IMG/VR virus record: IMGVR_UViG_3300049215_000529
Span: 62,001 to 126,000 of that record
Direction: 5' to 3' (one strand)
Length of the DNA: 64,000 bases
In this document: positions 25,125-31,209 of the stretch, in pieces
How the letters are laid out: each line of letters opens with the position of its first letter
Position numbering within the stretch: position 1 is the first letter of the stretch
Position numbers and translations under genes: made by a program
The notes under the pieces: generated by a model
What the model was told of the DNA's origin: nothing
The model's database searches: none
The model's input: the letters and a program-made list of their open reading frames with translations, nothing else

Positions 25125-26137
25125 GTATATTAGTTATCAAAATCAAACATAATGCCGATCTAACAGAACATTTGCGGAAGGCGGCGTTGGTAGCTAACTA
25201 TGCGATCAAAAATCGCATGAAATTATCATCAGTTAATGTCTCTAATATTGGTCTGCCTTCAGCAATTAGCAATCAAATTCTCCGCAAGTATGGCAAGAAC
25301 AAGAAGTGCAAGCGCATCAATCCAACGAAGATCAAGTTAGTAGCACCGGCACAGTCGATCAAGGTAGAAAGCTCTAAAATAAGAGTAGTACCTCTAAAAT
25401 TAACGCTAAACAATGAGAGTAAATATCAGATCGTAAAGGTCAAGCAGATTGAATTAGATGCTACTTATGCTTATGTTGCATTCGAGCAACAAGATCAGCC
25501 TATGCAACAATTGGAAAATTTTATTGGAGTTGATCTGAATGCAACATCTCATTGTGCGGTAGCTGCCGAACCTATTAGTGGTAAAGTTATTAAGCTTGGT
25601 AAGCAAGCACCTCATATACATAAGAAGTATAAGGCATTAAGAAGTAGTTTGCATAAGCAAAAATTATATAAGAAGTTGAAAGAAACAAAAGGTAAAGAAA
25701 CCAGAAAAGTAAAGTATCTTAATCATAAGATTAGCAAACAGATTGTTCAGTTTGCTAAAGACAACAATTGTGGTATCAAGTTAGAACAACTAACAGGTAT
25801 TCTCAATAGTAAAAAGAATAGTAAATCATTCCGTTATATTCTGAACTCTTGGAGCTACTATCAATTAGGCACAATGATCGCCTACAAAGCTCTACTTGCA
25901 GGTATTCCAGTATTGCATATTCGTCCAGCATACACCAGCCAAAACTGTAGTAAATGTGGCGAACTTGGAAAACGAAATGGTAAGAGGTTTAGCTGTTGTC
26001 ATTGCAAACACAGCGATCATGCGGATGTTAATGCGGCTTTCAATATCGCAAAGTCATCTGCCTTGATCACTTCCAAACAGACAGAGTTGTTTGGAAATGG
26101 TGCTACTGAAGCGCCTATGAGGCAATTCAATGTCTGA
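25121..26137 (+). CDS. tnpB: RNA-guided nuclease TnpB, compact (338 aa), RuvC D-E-D intact
   Basis: IGVDLN, IKLEQL, YTSQNCSKCG...CCHC, HADVNAAFNI. Confidence 0.93.
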   Translation: MSILVIKIKHNADLTEHLRKAALVANYAIKNRMKLSSVNVSNIGLPSAISNQILRKYGKNKKCKRINPTKIKLVAPAQSIKVESSKIRVVPLKLTLNNESKYQIVKVKQIELDATYAYVAFEQQDQPMQQLENFIGVDLNATSHCAVAAEPISGKVIKLGKQAPHIHKKYKALRSSLHKQKLYKKLKETKGKETRKVKYLNHKISKQIVQFAKDNNCGIKLEQLTGILNSKKNSKSFRYILNSWSYYQLGTMIAYKALLAGIPVLHIRPAYTSQNCSKCGELGKRNGKRFSCCHCKHSDHADVNAAFNIAKSSALITSKQTELFGNGATEAPMRQFNV

Positions 26138-26210
26138 AGCAAGACTTTTGAAACCTCAGAACCCAACGACTTTAGTCGTTGGTTATTCAGAAGTGAATTG
26201 AGAGGTGCCA
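26066..26210 (+). ncRNA. predicted omegaRNA of TnpB (scaffold to 26190, guide from 26191)
   Basis: overlaps tnpB 3' end and right end; stems 26071-26096 and 26163-26182; guide AAGTGAATTGAGAGGTGCCA; 5' end approximate. Confidence 0.7.
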
Positions 26211-26386: not shown

Positions 26387-26923
26387 TTATGCCTTTTGTT
26401 TAGTAGGCATAACTATCATACTCATAAATTTACCTTCCAAGGAAGTTGAGGGCGCAGGGGCAATCAAGCCAGCTAACTGCTGCAAAATCCAGTCCATCTT
26501 ATCCCTGCCTACTTGAGGATGGGTAATCTCACGACCACGGAAGCGAATAGTAAACTTAACTTTATGTCCCTCTGCCAAAAATTCTTTGGCTTGCTGAAGC
26601 TTGTGGTTCAAGTCATTCTCATCAGTATTGGGACGGAAAGTGAGTTCTTTCAATTCCTGAAGCCTTTGATTTTTCTTGGCTTCAGCCATTTTCTTTTTTT
26701 CTTCGTACTTATACTTACCGTAATCCATAATCTTACAGACAGGCGGAACAGCTCTTGGATTAATTTCTACCAAATCTAGGACTTGATCTTGAGCCATCTT
26801 AAGTGCATCACGTGTTGCCATGACGCCAGCATTGGTTCCATCGCTTAAAACCACACGAATTTGTGGGATGCGGATTTGATTGTTAATACGAATTCTTTGA
26901 TTAGTTGTTTGTGCGTTACTCAC
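26387..26923 (-). CDS. infC: translation initiation factor IF-3
   Basis: RINNQIR, DLVEINP..PPVCKIMDYGKYKYE, KELTFRPNTDENDL, GHKVKFTIRFRGRE. Confidence 0.95.
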   Translation of the reverse strand: MSNAQTTNQRIRINNQIRIPQIRVVLSDGTNAGVMATRDALKMAQDQVLDLVEINPRAVPPVCKIMDYGKYKYEEKKKMAEAKKNQRLQELKELTFRPNTDENDLNHKLQQAKEFLAEGHKVKFTIRFRGREITHPQVGRDKMDWILQQLAGLIAPAPSTSLEGKFMSMIVMPTKQKA

Positions 26924-27279
26924 TCAGTTTCCTCTTGTTTTTCTTTAAGAACTTCAATGGCAGCTTCTAGCAAATCTTCTTTACGATTTGTAGTATAGAA
27001 TTGTCCCTCTATACCTCGGGTATTGTAAACCTTGTAACCTTGTTTGGTTAGTTCGGTAAAAACTTTGTCATGAGAAGGGTCTACCATGGTTTTGTCCAGC
27101 TCTAAGGCTACTGCTAGGGGACAAAACTTCCCATCCTCATAATTATAGGTATCTAGTACCATCTCTTCTGGATAAGTAATCACTCTTTGCAATTGTGCAA
27201 TAGTCAATTGTCGTAATCCATTTTTTAATCCAGTTTTACGAGGATCTTCATTTTTTAATTTTATTGACGTCAATCCCAT
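26920..27279 (-). CDS. hypothetical protein
   Basis: track 26920..27363; start set at MGLTSIK. Confidence 0.6.
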   Translation of the reverse strand: MGLTSIKLKNEDPRKTGLKNGLRQLTIAQLQRVITYPEEMVLDTYNYEDGKFCPLAVALELDKTMVDPSHDKVFTELTKQGYKVYNTRGIEGQFYTTNRKEDLLEAAIEVLKEKQEETE

Positions 27280-27659
27280 ACTCTTCCAGGCAAGATATAT
27301 CCAAAGTCCATTGTTTACGGCTGCGCATAACCCAAGTCCAAAAAGAGCCTTTAACATAAACATCAGCTTCTGGGCGCTTCATTTTATTGACTTTCATCAA
27401 ATGCTGAAGAGCCGCTTCGCCTTTACCTCGGGTTTGGGCGAGACCTATATGTTTAACCATGTGACAGTCGGGACACAAGGCAATCATACCTTCCAATTTT
27501 TGAATTAAATTCTTGTCGTCATAATTCCAAATTTCATGACATTCTACCGGATGCTTTGGACCGACTTCACCACAAATTTCACAAGTATGCCACGCTTTGC
27601 CATATACTTGAGATTTTACTGCATCCCATTGTTTCTGCGTTAATACAGAGCGAACATTG
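27248..27659 (-). pseudogene. 5'-truncated HNH-like protein abutting the orphan IS right end
   Basis: open frame NVRSVLTQKQWDAVK...CEICG...HPVECHEIW...LCPDCHMVKH begins at the right-end junction with no start codon. Confidence 0.75.
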
Positions 27660-27784
27660 CTGAATAACCAACGACTAAAGTCGTTGGGTTCCGAGGTTCA
27701 AAAAGCTTTTCTTCAAGCATTTGATTGCCTCATAAGCGTTTCAGTACCACTATTCCATATAGGCTTTTGCTATATGGAGTGAAT
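27660..27784 (-). mobile_element. orphan IS605 right end / omegaRNA scaffold, no tnpB or left end
   Basis: last 32 nt identical to 26159-26190; similarity extends about 120 nt; upstream stem has different but paired sequence. Confidence 0.85.
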
Positions 27785-27879
27785 AATTTTCTCAAATTAT
27801 TCAATGTCGAAAACCTGCTTTTATGAGCAGTTGTAAAAATATTACCACAGCTCCCACATTTTAGTTCAATTATTTTCAT
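27730..27879 (-). CDS. 49-aa CxxC ORF running into the orphan scaffold (not in track)
   Basis: MKIIELKCGSCGNIFTTAHKSR...KRL. Confidence 0.35.
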   Translation of the reverse strand: MKIIELKCGSCGNIFTTAHKSRFSTLNNLRKLFTPYSKSLYGIVVLKRL

Positions 27880-27920
27880 GTAATCACATATAACACGATG
27901 TGTGGAGGTGTTCAGTAATT

Positions 27921-28277
27921 TGGTGGAGATGTAGGGTACTGCCCCCTAGTCCGCGATATGCCCTTATCAAAACTCGTTCACAAACTTAGTCAATATCAAC
28001 GTCATTGACAACGTTGCTAGATTGTCGCTCTAGCGGGTTATTTACTGTTTATTTCAAATCCACAATCCGTAGCCGAATGTGGACTCTATCTTTAGTGGGT
28101 TGAATGTCCTTTGATTACCAAAGCTATCTCATCTGGGACATATCATCATGCGGCTAGCGCAAATGATTCAAATGCATTATCGTTTGCATTTATACGTCGA
28201 TTACTTTTGGAGGGGCAATCATCCTCTGTTTGCGTCATTCTGATAATTCGTTATCCCGTCGAATCTATGTCATCCCC
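27921..28277 (-). ncRNA. ssrA: tmRNA, complete; tag ANDNAFESFALAA
   Basis: GGGGATG/CATCTCC-A-CCA with G3:U70, TTCGAC, pk1, tag 28187-28149 then TGATGA, T arm TAGGG-GGCAGTA-CCCTA. Confidence 0.93.
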
Positions 28278-28451
28278 ATTTTTAGTTTTAAGCCATTCTA
28301 TTAAGTCAACAAAGAAATCAGAAACCTTCTGTGCAGCTTCTTTCTCTTCTAAGCCTAACCCATATTTTTTATCCTGCAACCAATAAGATAGTTGAGGCGA
28401 GCCAGGACATTTAGGAAATTTCTGTCTACGAAAACTCTGATACTCTTCCAT
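28251..28451 (-). CDS. hypothetical protein between the two tmRNAs
   Basis: 66-aa ORF; last 9 codons lie inside the tmRNA 5' end. Confidence 0.5.
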   Translation of the reverse strand: MEEYQSFRRQKFPKCPGSPQLSYWLQDKKYGLGLEEKEAAQKVSDFFVDLIEWLKTKNGDDIDSTG

Positions 28452-28466
28452 GAGATCAATCGAGAT

Positions 28467-28746
28467 ACTTAGTCATTGGCAACAAAGACAGATAATCGCT
28501 CCATCGAGCTATCTACTGTTAATCTTATTATCATACATCGTAGCCCTATATGATAACCAGCTTTGTGGGTTGACGTTCTTTTGATTACTCAAGCAGTCTT
28601 ATCTCAGAACGTATGGGCCTTACTCAGGCAGCCATAGCATATGCATTATCGTTTGCATTTATTACGTTGATTACTTTGGTAGGTGTAATCGCCTCTGTCT
28701 GAATCATTTTGTCAATTCTTTACCACGTCGAAACCCGTGCATGCCC
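28467..28746 (-). ncRNA. ssrA: second tmRNA, 3'-truncated; tag ANDNAYAMAA
   Basis: GGGCATG..TTTCGACG, intact pk1, tag 28656-28627; colinear with the complete copy up to GACTAAGT, then no T arm or acceptor end. Confidence 0.85.
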
Positions 28747-28754
28747 TTAAATAA

Positions 28755-28773
28755 AACCCGCATTGTGCGGGTT
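28755..28773 (-). terminator. hairpin plus U-rich tail after tRNA-Thr(CGT)
   Basis: AACCCGCA-CAA-TGCGGGTT-TTATTT. Confidence 0.55.
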
Positions 28774-28847
28774 GGAGCTGATGATCGGTACTGCCCCGAT
28801 GCTATCTCGTTACGAGTGAGATGTTCTGCTATTTAAACTACATCAGC
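28773..28847 (-). tRNA. tRNA-Thr(CGT) with non-canonical GGCAGTA T-loop
   Basis: GCTGATG/CATCAGC-T-CCA, loop CT-CGT-AA, T arm ATCGG-GGCAGTA-CCGAT. Confidence 0.85.
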
Positions 28848-29477
28848 TTTTATAGCGGCTATAACTTCTTTTTCAATCTTATAGCGTTTAGCCCTTTCAA
28901 ATCTACCATTACCTTTATTACGACCTGCAAAAGTAGGTGTTTGAGCGTCACAATTATGGCAGATTAATCGTAGATTACATATGCTGCTATCATGTGGGTT
29001 ACCATCAATATGATCCATAACTAAAGGAACGGGTTTGTTCATCCATTCTGTGATAAAGCAAATTTCACATCGAACGCCTCTTGTTTCTAAGAGAAAATTT
29101 TTTAACCTGCGTACCGATACATTTCTATTATCAGAAGATAATAATTCTTCTTTACTAGACTTCCACTCAAAATCTTTTTGACAAGAATTGCTACAAAATT
29201 TACGATTAGCTCTAGCTGCCTTTTTACCACAAGCTAAACAATTAGAAGCTTCTTGACCGTGCCTTCTAACACCTTTATTGTTGAAAGCGGCACCACATGA
29301 TTGGTTGCAAAAATCATTATATCTTTTCTCATAAGAGATAGGTGCATTGCAAAACTTGCATAATTTTGGATTGGCATTCCAATCATCGATGCGATTTTGT
29401 TTTCGCATAGCTGCTGTTTTTGCAGCTTCAATTCCGCCTAATTTACCAGCTTCACTGGTGGTCAGCCCTTGTCTCAT
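28833..29477 (-). CDS. free-standing HNH homing endonuclease
   Basis: CKFC, FCNQSC, CLACG, FCSNSC, CEIC, MDHIDGN..NLRLICHNC; start at 29477 because the track extension crosses a tRNA. Confidence 0.85.
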   Translation of the reverse strand: MRQGLTTSEAGKLGGIEAAKTAAMRKQNRIDDWNANPKLCKFCNAPISYEKRYNDFCNQSCGAAFNNKGVRRHGQEASNCLACGKKAARANRKFCSNSCQKDFEWKSSKEELLSSDNRNVSVRRLKNFLLETRGVRCEICFITEWMNKPVPLVMDHIDGNPHDSSICNLRLICHNCDAQTPTFAGRNKGNGRFERAKRYKIEKEVIAAIKADVV

Positions 29478-29518
29478 ATGAATGAATATATCAGCTAATT
29501 TTAGGATTCGAACTTTAT

Positions 29519-29593
29519 TGGAGCTGTAGGTGGGGATCGAACCCACGACCACTACTTTACCAAAGTAGTATTCTACCACTGAACTACTACAGC
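29519..29593 (-). tRNA. tRNA-Thr(GGT)
   Basis: GCTGTAG/CTACAGC-T-CCA, CTACT-TTGGTAA-AGTAG, GTGGG-TTCGATC-CCCAC. Confidence 0.93.
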
Positions 29594-29653
29594 TTATTCG
29601 GTTTCAGCTTGTTTCGTACCCAGTATATTCACCGAAAACTTTAACCTGGGACT

Positions 29654-29728
29654 TGGAGCTGGTGCCGAGAATCGAACTCGGGTCTCTGCGTTACAAGGGC
29701 AGGGTCTTACCATTAGGACGAAACCAGC
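29654..29728 (-). tRNA. tRNA-Thr(TGT)
   Basis: GCTGGTT/CACCAGC-T-CCA (one mismatch), loop CT-TGT-AA, CCGAG-TTCGATT-CTCGG. Confidence 0.88.
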
Positions 29729-29740
29729 TTACGTGTACAT

Positions 29741-29768
29741 ATTATAACACTTTATTCCCATGTGTCAA
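29741..29768 (-). promoter_or_regulatory. consensus sigma70 promoter TTGACA-N16-TATAAT for the tRNA/tmRNA run
   Basis: perfect hexamers, -10 ends 12 nt before the first tRNA. Confidence 0.8.
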
Positions 29769-29786
29769 CCGCCCCAAATTAAAAAA

Positions 29787-30572
29787 TTATTGTGGGGCTC
29801 GGAAAATATCGGATCCATGTTTAAAAATATTCGATAAAAAGGATTGGTCCTTGGTGAAAATAGGCAGGTCCGGACTGACCATCCATTTATTCTTCATGGT
29901 ACCATCTTCCATTATCTTAGGCGCCTTATAACAAGCAGCACCTCTCCTAAAAGCCATGGGGCAGTTATTAAAATCAATGTTGGCTTCCTGATTCAATAAA
30001 TCAATCTTTTCATCAACACTCATTCCACTCAACATGTCTTTGATGGTATTTTTATCGTACTTCTTTAATAGTTCATAGAAGCAAGCAGATTGAATAGAAG
30101 TATGAAAATTATTCTGCTGCTTATGTACTAAAGTATTGATGGCTTCCATAATATTCGGTACGGCAAATACTTGAGAGGTGAAGATTGCATCTCCCATTAG
30201 ATTCAAGTCTATAGCGCTGGCACACTTATTGAAGTGCAGAGTAGCGATGGCAGCAGTAACCGAGGCAATCTTTTGGACGCGATTGTCATACCATGGAGTC
30301 GTTTCCTGACTTTGATCATTGCGGGCGATGATTACAATTTCATCATTGTGTTGGTAAGCAAAAAGGGCGCCTTCAACCTCGGTGCAAAGTTTCAACATGG
30401 TTGACATGATGCATTCTGAAAACTTGGGACAGTATGGCTTATCCAATAGCGAAGTCAGCTTAGAGAACGCCCTTCCATTGACACAAATGACAATGGGTAG
30501 ACGAGCTAGAAGCTTGGTGTCTGACGATTCCCGATAGGAATCGATTCTGTCTTTCAGTTTTAGATTTGACAT
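29787..30572 (-). CDS. Thg1/TLP-family protein, first catalytic Asp replaced by Asn
   Basis: VICVNGRAF (normally RxDGxxF), YQHNDEI, WYDNRVQKIASV, FRRGAAC. Confidence 0.85.
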   Translation of the reverse strand: MSNLKLKDRIDSYRESSDTKLLARLPIVICVNGRAFSKLTSLLDKPYCPKFSECIMSTMLKLCTEVEGALFAYQHNDEIVIIARNDQSQETTPWYDNRVQKIASVTAAIATLHFNKCASAIDLNLMGDAIFTSQVFAVPNIMEAINTLVHKQQNNFHTSIQSACFYELLKKYDKNTIKDMLSGMSVDEKIDLLNQEANIDFNNCPMAFRRGAACYKAPKIMEDGTMKNKWMVSPDLPIFTKDQSFLSNIFKHGSDIFRAPQ

Positions 30573-30587
30573 GATAATGAATATAAC

Positions 30588-31121
30588 TTAACGCAATACT
30601 GTCGGGTTATTACTTTTAATACTATTTAGGGTTTGCATCAATCTATCTTGCAAATTATATCCCAATTTTGAGGAAATATTTGGATTAAGCCCAGTTAATG
30701 CTCTAAATTGACCATTGCCCAACATAGCGTCTGCCCAAGTATGAATTTCATTAGGGGTAACTTTCCTTCCATACAAAGAGCCCTTATTCAAAAAAGTATC
30801 ATAAAACATTTGAGCAACAGTGCTGACATTCTTTTGGTCACCAGTGCTAGTACGATCGAGAACTCGGTCTATTATTTTTTGAAAGTTATCTTTGCCTTGG
30901 CTAGCGAAGTGCATAGCATCATTGAGCATTTTGGTCAATGTCCCAAATAGATTAACAGTGGGACCATTATATTCCCTTTTCCTATTAACCAATAACATGC
31001 CAGGTACAGCTGGAGGTGGTGGCAAAGCAGGAACAGTAGCCGCAGGTTGAGCAGGCTGCGTCGTAGGCGGAGTTGCCTGCGCTACCTTCTCTAATAGCTT
31101 AATTCTTAGTTTCCTGTTCAT
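30588..31121 (-). CDS. hypothetical protein (KVAQ motif, Pro-rich N-terminus)
   Basis: 177-aa ORF. Confidence 0.7.
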   Translation of the reverse strand: MNRKLRIKLLEKVAQATPPTTQPAQPAATVPALPPPPAVPGMLLVNRKREYNGPTVNLFGTLTKMLNDAMHFASQGKDNFQKIIDRVLDRTSTGDQKNVSTVAQMFYDTFLNKGSLYGRKVTPNEIHTWADAMLGNGQFRALTGLNPNISSKLGYNLQDRLMQTLNSIKSNNPTVLR

Positions 31122-31209
31122 CTAGTACTTTATGCCGAAAATATAGTAGACCCAGGATTAGGAGCCACATAATTCCATACAATATCCAGCCACCATCAAG
31201 ATCTATCAT
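31099..31209 (-). CDS. 36-aa single-TM peptide (not in track)
   Basis: AAAGGT upstream; MIDLDGGWILYGIMWLLILGLLYFRHKVLDEQETKN. Confidence 0.45.
   Translation of the reverse strand: MIDLDGGWILYGIMWLLILGLLYFRHKVLDEQETKN

What the first reader, a model, noticed from the sequence alone, without database searches (positions are those of the whole stretch)
27921..28746. Tandem tmRNA genes with different tags; the upstream one lacks its tRNA-like 3' end
Seen: complete copy (ANDNAFESFALAA) and upstream copy (ANDNAYAMAA) are colinear but diverged; both keep pk1 pairing and an open tag. The upstream copy stops at the shared GACTAAGT and is followed by a 66-aa ORF. It cannot be alanylated alone. Inference: remnant of a replacement event, or a decoy for SmpB, ribosomes or tmRNA-cleaving toxins, or a piece pairing with the other copy's 3' end (6 of 7 acceptor pairs possible).
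Basis: partly seen in the sequence, partly recalled or inferred. Interest (0 to 1): 0.75.

Follow-up and report, generated by a model that had tools for sequence, protein, structure and literature searches.

The report
Truncated tmRNA remnant beside phage tmRNA
A huge phage from a moss metagenome carries one complete ribosome-rescue RNA (tmRNA) gene and, just upstream, the first four-fifths of a second, different tmRNA allele; this is most likely a still-transcribed scar of recombination, not a new kind of RNA machine.

Summary
On the minus strand lie a complete tmRNA (27921-28277, Rfam 96 bits, tag ANDNAFESFALAA) and an upstream 280-nt copy (28467-28746, 41 bits, tag ANDNAYAMAA). The upstream copy stops inside pseudoknot 4. 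It lacks the P2 3' strand, the T-arm and the acceptor 3' strand.

Logan contigs from two DNA runs cross the junction without a difference, and a 100%-identical IMG/VR contig holds the same arrangement.

The window is part of a 204-kb fragment of a huge phage. All 14 related loci examined carry a single complete tmRNA in the same tRNA-Thr/tmRNA operon, and five relatives' whole records hold only one.

The two copies are different alleles of a mosaic gene family. They differ in D-loop/T-loop class and in which relatives each segment resembles.

The truncated copy keeps the ancestral upstream flank and the complete copy keeps the ancestral downstream flank. A unique 189-nt spacer, open as an orphan 66-aa ORF, separates them.

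One metatranscriptome holds the truncated copy as RNA at about one fifth of the complete copy's depth, while neighbouring genes are silent.

The best reading is a transcribed 5' gene remnant left by illegitimate recombination. Pairing with the other copy's 3' end and a two-piece tmRNA are not supported. A decoy role is untested. Interest is modest.

The parts
29741..29768 (-). Sigma-70-type promoter-like site (TTGACA, 16 nt, TG-TATAAT; 12 of 12) ahead of the tRNA/tmRNA operon
29657..29728 (-). tRNA, Thr(UGU)-like, standard T-loop
29519..29593 (-). tRNA-Thr(GGU)
28833..29474 (-). HNH endonuclease gene between two tRNA genes. Its stop codon lies inside the next tRNA gene.
28776..28847 (-). tRNA-Thr(CGU)-like with an unusual elbow (D-loop AG instead of GG, T-loop GGCAGUA). 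It is found by Rfam (44 bits) and missed by ARAGORN.
28755..28773 (-). GC-rich hairpin followed by a T-run, directly upstream of the truncated copy. The same tRNA-Thr(CGU)/hairpin/tmRNA layout occurs in relatives L010, L013, L016, L017 and L018.
28467..28746 (-). Truncated tmRNA (allele A). It holds the acceptor 5' strand GGGCAUG, a standard GG D-loop analogue, the P2 5' strand, PK1, the tag ANDNAYAMAA (28624-28656), PK2, PK3 and the 5' half of PK4. It lacks the rest of PK4, the P2 3' strand, the T-arm and the acceptor 3' strand with CCA.
   Evidence: RNA contig 28482-28668
28278..28466 (-). Unique spacer with no similarity to tmRNA 3' ends or to any related locus. One frame is open across its whole length.
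28251..28451 (-). orf66, an orphan 66-aa ORF. Its last 9 codons are the 5' end of the complete tmRNA read as protein. No homologue exists beyond the identical twin contig, and no RNA contig covers it.
27921..28277 (-). Complete tmRNA (allele B). It has the acceptor stem GGGGAUG/CAUCUCC with a G3-U pair and an encoded CCA, a variant elbow (D-loop UAG, T-loop GGCAGUA) and the tag ANDNAFESFALAA (28146-28187).
27730..27879 (-). p49, a small Cys-rich ORF. Together with the 40 nt after the tmRNA it forms the conserved downstream flank, shared with L017, L030, L011 and L014.
27248..27496 (-). C-terminal part of a second HNH endonuclease (PHROG 5200, profile positions 71-151 of 154)

Best explanation
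The upstream element is the 5' 280 nt of a second tmRNA allele (A). An illegitimate recombination event in the phage's tRNA-Thr/tmRNA operon left it behind.

Inferred history: the ancestral locus read tRNA-Thr(CGU), hairpin, one tmRNA, p49. A DNA segment from a related co-infecting phage carried the tail of an ORF (now the spacer and orf66) followed by a different tmRNA allele (B). It was joined into the resident gene inside PK4. This removed the 3' fifth of allele A and placed allele B next to the old downstream flank.

Allele B is the working tmRNA. Allele A cannot form an acceptor stem, a T-arm or P2. It therefore cannot be cut by RNase P, charged by AlaRS or bound by SmpB, and does not take part in trans-translation.

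Because allele A lies inside the same transcription unit, it is still transcribed. Its pseudoknotted body survives as RNA at a lower level than the complete tmRNA.

Shown: the anatomy, the junction, the single-copy state in relatives, the allele differences, the flank synteny and the presence in RNA. Inferred: the direction and mechanism of the event, co-transcription and the lack of function.
For: - **Truncation is real.** The copy is cut cleanly, and the following 189 nt resemble no tmRNA 3' end.
- **Junction is verified.** Two DNA assemblies and an identical IMG/VR contig hold it.
- **Relatives have one copy.** All 14 related loci have one complete tmRNA (13 by Rfam; L187 by nhmmer and ARAGORN). 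Five relatives' whole records, one of them 100% complete at 480 kb, hold only one.
- **Flanks are split between the copies.** The truncated copy follows the conserved tRNA-Thr(CGU) plus hairpin. The complete copy precedes the conserved downstream flank.
- **The copies are not recent duplicates.** Allele A has the standard GG D-loop, which in every relative goes with a UUCGA T-loop. Allele B has the UAG/GGCAGUA class.
- **Segment identities differ.** B is 94-95% identical to L017 in both TLD halves and PK1, but 54-61% from the tag end through PK3. A is 78-81% identical to L017 and L030 from the tag end through PK3, 70% in the 5' TLD, and resembles L015/L012 in PK4.
- **The family is mosaic.** A metagenome tmRNA (L187) shares only the tag module with A.
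- **The spacer looks like a coding fragment.** It is open in one frame from the junction to the tmRNA, and several relatives have an ORF ending right at the tmRNA 5' end.
- **HNH endonuclease genes flank the locus**.
- **No separate promoter was found** for either copy.
- **RNA evidence.** Contigs cover the complete copy at depths 16.9 and 12.7 and the truncated copy at 3.1. There is no RNA on the spacer, the HNH gene, Thg1 or IF3.
Against: - The retained part shows no decay. It has 39 of 43 conserved nested pairs, against 34-42 in complete relatives. The tag frame is open and ends in AA-stop.
- It is present as RNA while neighbouring mRNAs are not detected.
- Both points could mean selection, but also fit a recent event and a stable fold.
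- No donor carrying the spacer sequence was found, so the source and direction of the event are inferred.
- No relative closer than 66-74% Thg1 identity exists in the collections, so retention or decay over time cannot be judged.
Confidence: 0.6

Rival explanations
1. The TLD-less RNA is kept because it does something. As a stable pseudoknot- and tag-bearing RNA it could titrate a factor that binds the mRNA-like domain of tmRNA, such as ribosomal protein S1, RNase R, or a host nuclease or sensor aimed at tmRNA. That would protect or tune the phage's working tmRNA.
For: The copy is present in an RNA library at about one fifth of the complete tmRNA while neighbouring genes are silent. A second, separately filed record of the same size holds the same share of its words, and a wetland metatranscriptome holds 31% of them. 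Its helices and tag are intact. There is a precedent for a partial phage tmRNA with an effect: the TLD-only molecule of mycobacteriophage DS6A inhibits tmRNA (PMC4131195 and PMC11915505).
Against: None of the 14 related loci keeps such a copy. It has no promoter of its own. Stability is expected for any pseudoknotted RNA. No partner is known for a tmRNA without its tRNA-like domain. The partial word matches in other runs may come from relatives' complete tmRNAs that share a module.
Confidence: 0.15
2. It is the coding piece of a two-piece tmRNA. The break lies about where permuted tmRNA genes are split. An acceptor piece encoded elsewhere, in the missing half of the phage genome or by a host with two-piece tmRNA, would pair with it and be alanylated.
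For: The truncation point (after PK3 and within PK4, before the P2 3' strand) matches the split of two-piece tmRNAs. RF04321 (permuted tmRNA) scores 46.0 bits on the upstream tRNA plus the truncated copy, just under its cut-off of 47. The resume-codon context is shared exactly with genuine alpha- and beta-proteobacterial permuted tmRNAs in viral contigs.
Against: The RF04321 hit is an artefact of a tRNA lying next to a tmRNA 5' end. The same model scores 47.8-60.4 bits on relatives L017, L010 and L019, which have ordinary complete tmRNAs. Genuine permuted genes score 87-153 bits. The upstream tRNA has its own perfect acceptor stem and pairs only 4 of 7 with GGGCAUG (sequence). No tRNA-like CAUG(U/C)CC-N-CCA acceptor end occurs in the 204-kb record (the single pattern match has no T-arm before it), and none occurs in the 130-kb twin. 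Only about half of the genome is held, so absence is not proven.
Confidence: 0.05
3. An in-situ tandem duplication of the phage's own tmRNA, followed by divergence of the copies and deletion of the first copy's 3' end, rather than acquisition of a foreign allele.
For: The genome holds several tandem pairs of same-anticodon tRNAs (Arg-UCU, Glu-UUC, His-GUG, Val-UAC, Gly). The copies are colinear and 86% identical from PK1 to the tag start.
Against: The copies belong to different D-loop/T-loop classes and differ in which relatives each segment resembles. They are only 53-62% identical from the tag end through PK3. The spacer is unrelated to tmRNA or to the conserved flanks. No relative shows an intermediate tandem state.
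Confidence: 0.1
4. The truncated copy's 5' strands pair with the 3' end of the downstream copy, in one long precursor or in trans, giving an alternative tmRNA with the second tag.
For: Six of seven acceptor pairs are possible, including the G3-U pair (sequence).
Against: The predicted duplex gain is -4.8 kcal/mol, against -18.0 for the cognate 5' strand. This is weaker than for most unrelated relatives' 5' ends. The D-loop classes do not match. No RNA contig covers the spacer and no joint was reported.
Confidence: 0.03
5. An assembly chimera at 28467 that joins two strains' tmRNA alleles.
For: The family is mosaic. A 171-nt stretch downstream (27662-27832) has about threefold DNA depth, and contigs break there.
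Against: Single Logan contigs from two runs bridge 27803-31200 with no difference. No joint and none of the listed loose ends lies at 28467, though 11 loose ends were not shown. An independent IMG/VR contig is identical across it.
Confidence: 0.02

Closest known systems
[quoted passage not shown]
   Same: A partial ssrA copy lies next to or near an intact one, is produced by DNA rearrangement at the tmRNA gene, and lacks one terminus needed for the tRNA-like domain.
   Different: Here it sits in a huge phage, not a bacterial chromosome. No integrase or genomic island is involved. It is the 5' part that is left, whereas island integration usually displaces a 3' fragment. The remnant is a different allele from the intact copy and is detectable as RNA.
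Phage-encoded tmRNAs (mycobacteriophage Bxz1 group, Bacillus phage G, huge phages; PMC4131195, PMC7162821, PMC12484599)
   Same: The complete copy is a one-piece tmRNA in a large phage that also encodes many tRNAs and translation factors. No phage SmpB was found here, so host SmpB would be used.
   Different: The complete copy and five relatives have a non-canonical elbow (D-loop AG or T-loop with G at position 55) and are missed by ARAGORN, the program used in those surveys. A tandem arrangement with a truncated second allele is not mentioned in the four tmRNA papers read here, which were searched by term only.
TLD-only tmRNA of mycobacteriophage DS6A (PMC4131195, PMC11915505)
   Same: A phage carries only part of a tmRNA.
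   Different: DS6A keeps the tRNA-like domain and can titrate SmpB. The element here is the opposite part: the mRNA-like domain and pseudoknots without a tRNA-like domain.
Two-piece (circularly permuted) tmRNA, Rfam RF04321, RF01849, RF01850
   Same: The truncated copy ends close to where two-piece tmRNAs are split, so it resembles a coding piece.
   Different: There is no acceptor piece, no permuted gene order and a sub-threshold score that controls show to be an artefact.

Membership tests
tmRNA (RF00023): complete copy 27921-28277 | Covariance-model score at or above the gathering threshold over the full model | tested here: met
   96.1 bits against 47, model positions 1-374
tmRNA (RF00023): complete copy 27921-28277 | Acceptor stem with a G3-U pair and a 3' CCA; T-arm | tested here: met
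   GGGGAUG pairs with CAUCUCC with G3-U, and ACCA is encoded. The T-stem has 5 bp. The T-loop is non-canonical (GGCAGUA) and covaries with the D-loop UAG in four related tmRNAs (L030 with a related loop, UGCAAUG).
tmRNA (RF00023): complete copy 27921-28277 | Tag reading frame with a GCA resume codon, ending in hydrophobic residues plus AA and a stop | tested here: met
   ANDNAFESFALAA*
tmRNA (RF00023): complete copy 27921-28277 | SmpB partner | tested here: not met
   No PF01668 match in the 204-kb record, the twin or three relatives, one of them 100% complete. Host SmpB is presumed; the host is unknown.
tmRNA (RF00023): truncated copy 28467-28746 | Covariance-model score at or above the gathering threshold | tested here: not met
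   41.2 bits against 47
tmRNA (RF00023): truncated copy 28467-28746 | tRNA-like domain: acceptor 3' strand with CCA, T-arm, P2 3' strand | tested here: not met
   These parts are unaligned in the model. The downstream 189 nt are no more similar to 14 tmRNA 3' ends than shuffles.
tmRNA (RF00023): truncated copy 28467-28746 | PK1, tag frame, PK2 and PK3 | tested here: met
   The tag is ANDNAYAMAA*. It forms 39 of 43 conserved nested pairs, within the range of complete relatives. PK1 stem 2 has 6 bp and stem 1 has 3 of 4 bp (read from the sequence). PK4 is cut.
Two-piece / permuted tmRNA (RF04321) | Acceptor piece upstream of the coding piece, pairing with its 5' strand; score at or above the threshold | tested here: not met
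   46.0 bits against 47. The 'acceptor piece' is a complete tRNA with its own stem and pairs 4 of 7 with GGGCAUG. The same model scores 47.8-60.4 on relatives with ordinary tmRNAs and 87-153 on genuine permuted genes.
Two-piece / permuted tmRNA (RF04321) | A separately encoded acceptor piece anywhere in the genome | tested here: inconclusive
   None was found in 204 kb plus the twin's extra sequence, but CheckV completeness is only 47%.
tmRNA pseudogene / gene remnant | A partial ssrA missing one terminus, an intact copy present, and absence from relatives | tested here: met
tmRNA pseudogene / gene remnant | Lack of function (no charging, no tagging) | not testable with these tools
   This needs aminoacylation assays or tag detection.

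The most novel reading that the evidence does not exclude
The TLD-less tmRNA is a retained, functional phage RNA. It would act either as a free 'coding piece' that borrows an acceptor piece (from the unsequenced half of the phage or from a host with two-piece tmRNA) to add a second tag, or as a decoy that shields the phage's working tmRNA from a host factor.
Probability: 0.12. Interest if true: 0.7.

Novelty: new member of a known kind. Interest (0 to 1): 0.35.

Why it matters
As a recombination scar it matters mainly as a marker. It shows that the tmRNA genes of this group of huge phages are swapped module by module (TLD class, tag, individual pseudoknots) between co-infecting relatives, within an operon flanked by HNH endonuclease genes.

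It also exposes an annotation gap. The complete copy and five relatives carry a covarying non-canonical D-loop/T-loop pair and are invisible to ARAGORN, so surveys that rely on that program undercount phage tmRNAs.

If the remnant were instead functional, it would be the first tmRNA body known to work without its own tRNA-like domain.

Tried and rejected
- **Two-piece tmRNA using the upstream tRNA.** Rejected by controls on relatives and on genuine permuted genes and by base-pair counting.
- **Acceptor piece elsewhere.** No tRNA-like match to CATG[CT]CC-N-CCA or to G-U-tolerant versions in the genome (the one pattern match has no T-arm) or the twin. A viral-collection scan for a T-loop plus CATGYCCACCA gave only unrelated tRNAs and tmRNAs.
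- **Hidden, decayed 3' end in the spacer.** An ATGTCC hexamer could pair 6 of 7 with the 5' end, but there is no T-arm before it, and local alignments to 14 tmRNA 3' ends do not exceed shuffles (folding shows nothing).
- **Pairing with the complete copy's 3' end.** It is energetically weak.
- **orf66 as a conserved gene or a fragment of a known one.** No hit in Pfam, PHROGs, the 5.8-billion-protein search, IMG/VR, GenBank phages or the related loci beyond the tmRNA-derived last residues. The ESM Atlas result was uninformative.
- **A full-length version of allele A.** A pattern for its 5' end found only unrelated loci. A pattern for its tag found L187, which shares only the tag module.
- **Host inference from the phage IF3.** Best matches are at most 52% identical and spread over many phyla.
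- **A link between the HNH gene and the variant T-loop class.** HNH homologues occur with both classes, so I make no claim.

Full report
**What is there**

All features lie on the minus strand.
- Rfam finds a complete tmRNA at 27921-28277 (96.1 bits, gathering score 47).
- With a relaxed threshold it finds a second tmRNA-like stretch at 28446-28738 (41.2 bits). Its acceptor 3' strand, T-arm and P2 3' strand are not aligned.
- ARAGORN reports neither copy.
- The two stretches align colinearly (mean column identity 77%, which counts unpaired overhangs as identical) up to GACTAAGT, which ends at 28467.
- The 189 nt between the copies are no more similar to the 3' end of any of 14 tmRNAs than shuffled sequence is. 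The truncation is therefore clean, not a decayed 3' end.
- Alignment with relatives L015 and L012 shows that the terminal GACTAAGT of the short copy corresponds to a GACTAAGT inside pseudoknot 4. The copy thus ends within PK4.
- A 66-codon ORF (28251-28451) fills the spacer and runs 27 nt into the complete tmRNA.

**Is the junction real?**

The window is part of a 204-kb IMG/VR virus record with CheckV completeness 47%.
- A second IMG/VR contig of 130 kb is 100% identical over 14,184 nt including both copies.
- Logan contigs of two moss-metagenome DNA runs (10.6 and 45.6 kb) cover 27803-31200 without a single difference.
- No joint lies at 28467, and none of the listed loose ends does.
- These samples may be the source of the window, so this checks the assembly only. 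A misassembly is very unlikely.

**Context**

The genome fragment encodes at least 32 tRNAs, all on one strand and all with an encoded CCA. Next to the locus lie IF-3 (26387-26923) and a Thg1-like enzyme (29787-30572).

The local order on the minus strand is:
1. A perfect sigma-70-type promoter-like site (29768-29741).
2. Two tRNA-Thr genes.
3. An HNH endonuclease gene (28833-29474).
4. A tRNA-Thr(CGU)-like gene (28776-28847).
5. A hairpin with a T-run (28773-28755).
6. The truncated tmRNA.
7. The spacer and orf66.
8. The complete tmRNA.
9. A small Cys-rich ORF, p49.
10. The C-terminal part of a second HNH endonuclease (27248-27496).

No SmpB gene was found in this record, in the twin or in three relatives, one of which is a 100%-complete 480-kb genome.

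**Relatives**

The Thg1-like protein retrieved 12 loci from IMG/VR. One is the identical twin; the rest are 66-74% identical. A tag-start pattern retrieved more loci.
- Every one of 13 distinct related loci has exactly one complete tmRNA downstream of the same tRNA-Thr cluster.
- A 14th, the metagenome contig L187, also has one complete tmRNA.
- The whole records of five relatives hold one tmRNA each.
- Only the identical twin has the tandem arrangement, so the truncated copy is specific to this lineage.
- In L010, L013, L016, L017 and L018 the tmRNA is immediately preceded by tRNA-Thr(CGU) and a hairpin with a T-run. This is exactly the upstream flank of the truncated copy.
- The 90 nt after the complete copy are homologous to the sequence after the tmRNA of L017, L030, L011 and L014.
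- Each copy therefore keeps one ancestral flank. This is the signature of an insertion or recombination inside a formerly single gene.

**The copies are different alleles of a mosaic family**

Across the related tmRNAs the D-loop analogue and the T-loop covary.
- GG before (U/A)UUCGAC goes with a UUCGA T-loop in ten tmRNAs.
- UAG goes with a GGCAGU(A/G) T-loop in the complete copy, L017, L011 and L012, and with UGCAAUG in L030.
- L019 does not fit either class: it has GG in the D-loop but another non-canonical T-loop.
- The truncated copy has the GG form, so its lost 3' end was of the standard class. Its 5' strand GGGCAUG also does not match the complete copy's CAUCUCC.

Segment identities point to different relatives for each copy.

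| Segment | Complete copy | Truncated copy |
|---|---|---|
| 5' TLD + P2 | 94% to L017 | 70% to L017 and L030; best 80% to L013 |
| PK1 to tag start | 95% to L017, 98% to L030 | 88% to L030, 81% to L017 |
| Tag end, PK2, PK3 | 54-61% to L017 | 78-81% to L017 and L030 |
| PK4 | 71% to L017; best 80% to L010 and L013 | 41% to L017; best 58% to L012, 54% to L015 |
| 3' P2 + TLD | 95% to L017 | absent |

A metagenome tmRNA (L187) shares only the tag module with the truncated copy. The family is thus shuffled module by module, and the two window copies are not recent duplicates of each other.

**State of the truncated copy**

In 43 conserved nested base pairs of the mRNA-like and pseudoknot region it forms 39 standard pairs. 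Complete relatives form 34-42. The tag frame is intact. There is no sign of decay, which fits either a recent event or continued constraint.

**Expression**

In two metatranscriptome runs, RNA contigs cover the complete tmRNA:
- 28027-28268 at depth 16.9 in one run.
- 28035-28217 at depth 12.7 in the other.

In one of these runs a 187-nt contig covers 28482-28668 of the truncated copy at depth 3.1 with no mismatch and no unlike extension. Nothing covers the spacer, the HNH gene, Thg1 or IF-3, so DNA carry-over is unlikely.

A second search found the same share of the truncated copy's words in a separately filed record of equal size, which is probably the same data. A wetland metatranscriptome holds 31% of the words, which may come from a relative's module.

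Contigs show presence only. They do not give RNA ends or levels.

No separate promoter was found for either copy. The hairpin abuts the truncated copy's first base. I therefore infer that both copies come from the operon transcript. The complete copy would be stabilised by its tRNA-like domain and SmpB, and the truncated one only by its pseudoknots.

**Interpretations tested**

- *Pairing with the other copy's 3' end.* The predicted gain is -4.8 kcal/mol, against -18.0 for the cognate strand and -2.8 to -12.4 for most non-cognate relatives (L017, with a near-identical TLD, gives -18.9). Not supported.
- *Two-piece tmRNA.* The permuted-tmRNA model scores 46.0 bits on the upstream tRNA plus the truncated copy. 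It also scores 47.8-60.4 on relatives with ordinary tmRNAs and 87-153 on genuine permuted genes. The hit therefore reflects only a tRNA lying next to a tmRNA 5' end.
- *A separate acceptor piece.* No tRNA-like acceptor end complementary to GGGCAUG exists in the available 204 kb (the one pattern match has no T-arm) or in the twin. Half of the genome is missing, so this is not conclusive.
- *SmpB decoy.* This is unlikely because SmpB binds the tRNA-like domain (established knowledge). Other decoy roles could not be tested.

**orf66**

It has no homologue in Pfam, PHROGs, 5.8 billion proteins, IMG/VR or GenBank phages. Its only matches in related loci are the tmRNA 5' end read as protein.

Its frame is open from a TGA inside the terminal AATGACTAAGT to the tmRNA, that is, across the entire spacer. 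Several relatives have an ORF ending at the tmRNA's first base.

I read the spacer as the tail of such a donor ORF, brought in together with allele B. This is an inference.

**Comparison with what is known**

- Phage tmRNAs are known from the Bxz1 group, phage G and huge phages.
- The TLD-only molecule of phage DS6A is the mirror image of this element.

The finding is therefore a new member of a known kind: a tmRNA gene remnant, here in a huge phage, of a different allele from its intact neighbour and still present as RNA.

**Verdict**

- A retained function is not excluded (about 0.2 across the decoy and two-piece rivals; the combined novel reading is scored 0.12).
- Interest is modest (0.35).

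Noticed in passing
window 27921-27960 and 28263-28277 (complete tmRNA); 28776-28847 (tRNA); loci L017, L011, L012, L030, L018:7581-7652, L014:6115-6187, L019:8762-8832: A non-canonical tRNA elbow recurs in this phage group. The D-loop has AG where G18-G19 is expected, and the T-loop has G at position 55 (GGCAGUA, GGCAGUG, UGCAAUG, UGCAAGU). It occurs in five tmRNAs and in several tRNAs. In the tmRNAs the two changes always occur together, which suggests a compensated A18/G55 tertiary pair.
   Followed up: partly
window 27921-28277; loci L011, L012, L017, L019, L030: ARAGORN finds all nine related tmRNAs with a standard T-loop. It misses all five with a non-canonical T-loop, and the window's complete copy as well. 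Phage surveys that rely on ARAGORN will undercount such tmRNAs.
   Followed up: yes
window 27660-27754 and 26096-26190: A 95-nt inverted repeat (85% identity) brackets the IF-3, p147 and HNH-fragment block. The twin contig ends exactly there. The stretch 27662-27832 has about threefold DNA depth, with loose ends leading into other sequence, and it is present in RNA contigs of two runs.
   Followed up: partly
window 28833-28847 and 28251-28277: Two ORFs end inside the next RNA gene. The HNH endonuclease ORF stops 15 nt into tRNA-Thr(CGU), and orf66 stops 27 nt into the tmRNA. Cutting out the RNA would leave such a message without its stop codon.
   Followed up: no
G000:C1:199329-199420 (outside the window): A long-arm tRNA with anticodon CUA (ARAGORN labels it Pyl, but it is Ser-like in shape) lies among the tRNA-Ser genes. 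It may be an amber suppressor. I did not check whether the phage recodes TAG.
   Followed up: no
G000:C1:136025-136842, 185444-185899, 188370-188526 (outside the window): There are several tandem pairs of tRNAs with the same anticodon but clearly different sequences: Arg-UCU, Glu-UUC, His-GUG, Gly-UCC and Gly-GCC, Val-UAC. Allele stacking in RNA gene arrays may be a general habit of this genome.
   Followed up: no
loci L010, L013, L016, L017, L018; window 28755-28773: A GC-rich hairpin followed by a T-run sits directly between tRNA-Thr(CGU) and the first base of the tmRNA in many relatives. It looks like a terminator yet lies inside what must be one transcription unit. Its role (attenuation or processing) is unknown.
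   Followed up: no
loci L024, L044, L047, L048, L021, L022, L026, L031: Viral contigs that share the exact resume-codon context TAAATGCAAACGATAATGCAT carry genuine permuted (two-piece) alpha- or beta-proteobacterial-type tmRNA genes (RF04321 at 87-153 bits). This hints that the hosts of these phages are Proteobacteria.
   Followed up: partly
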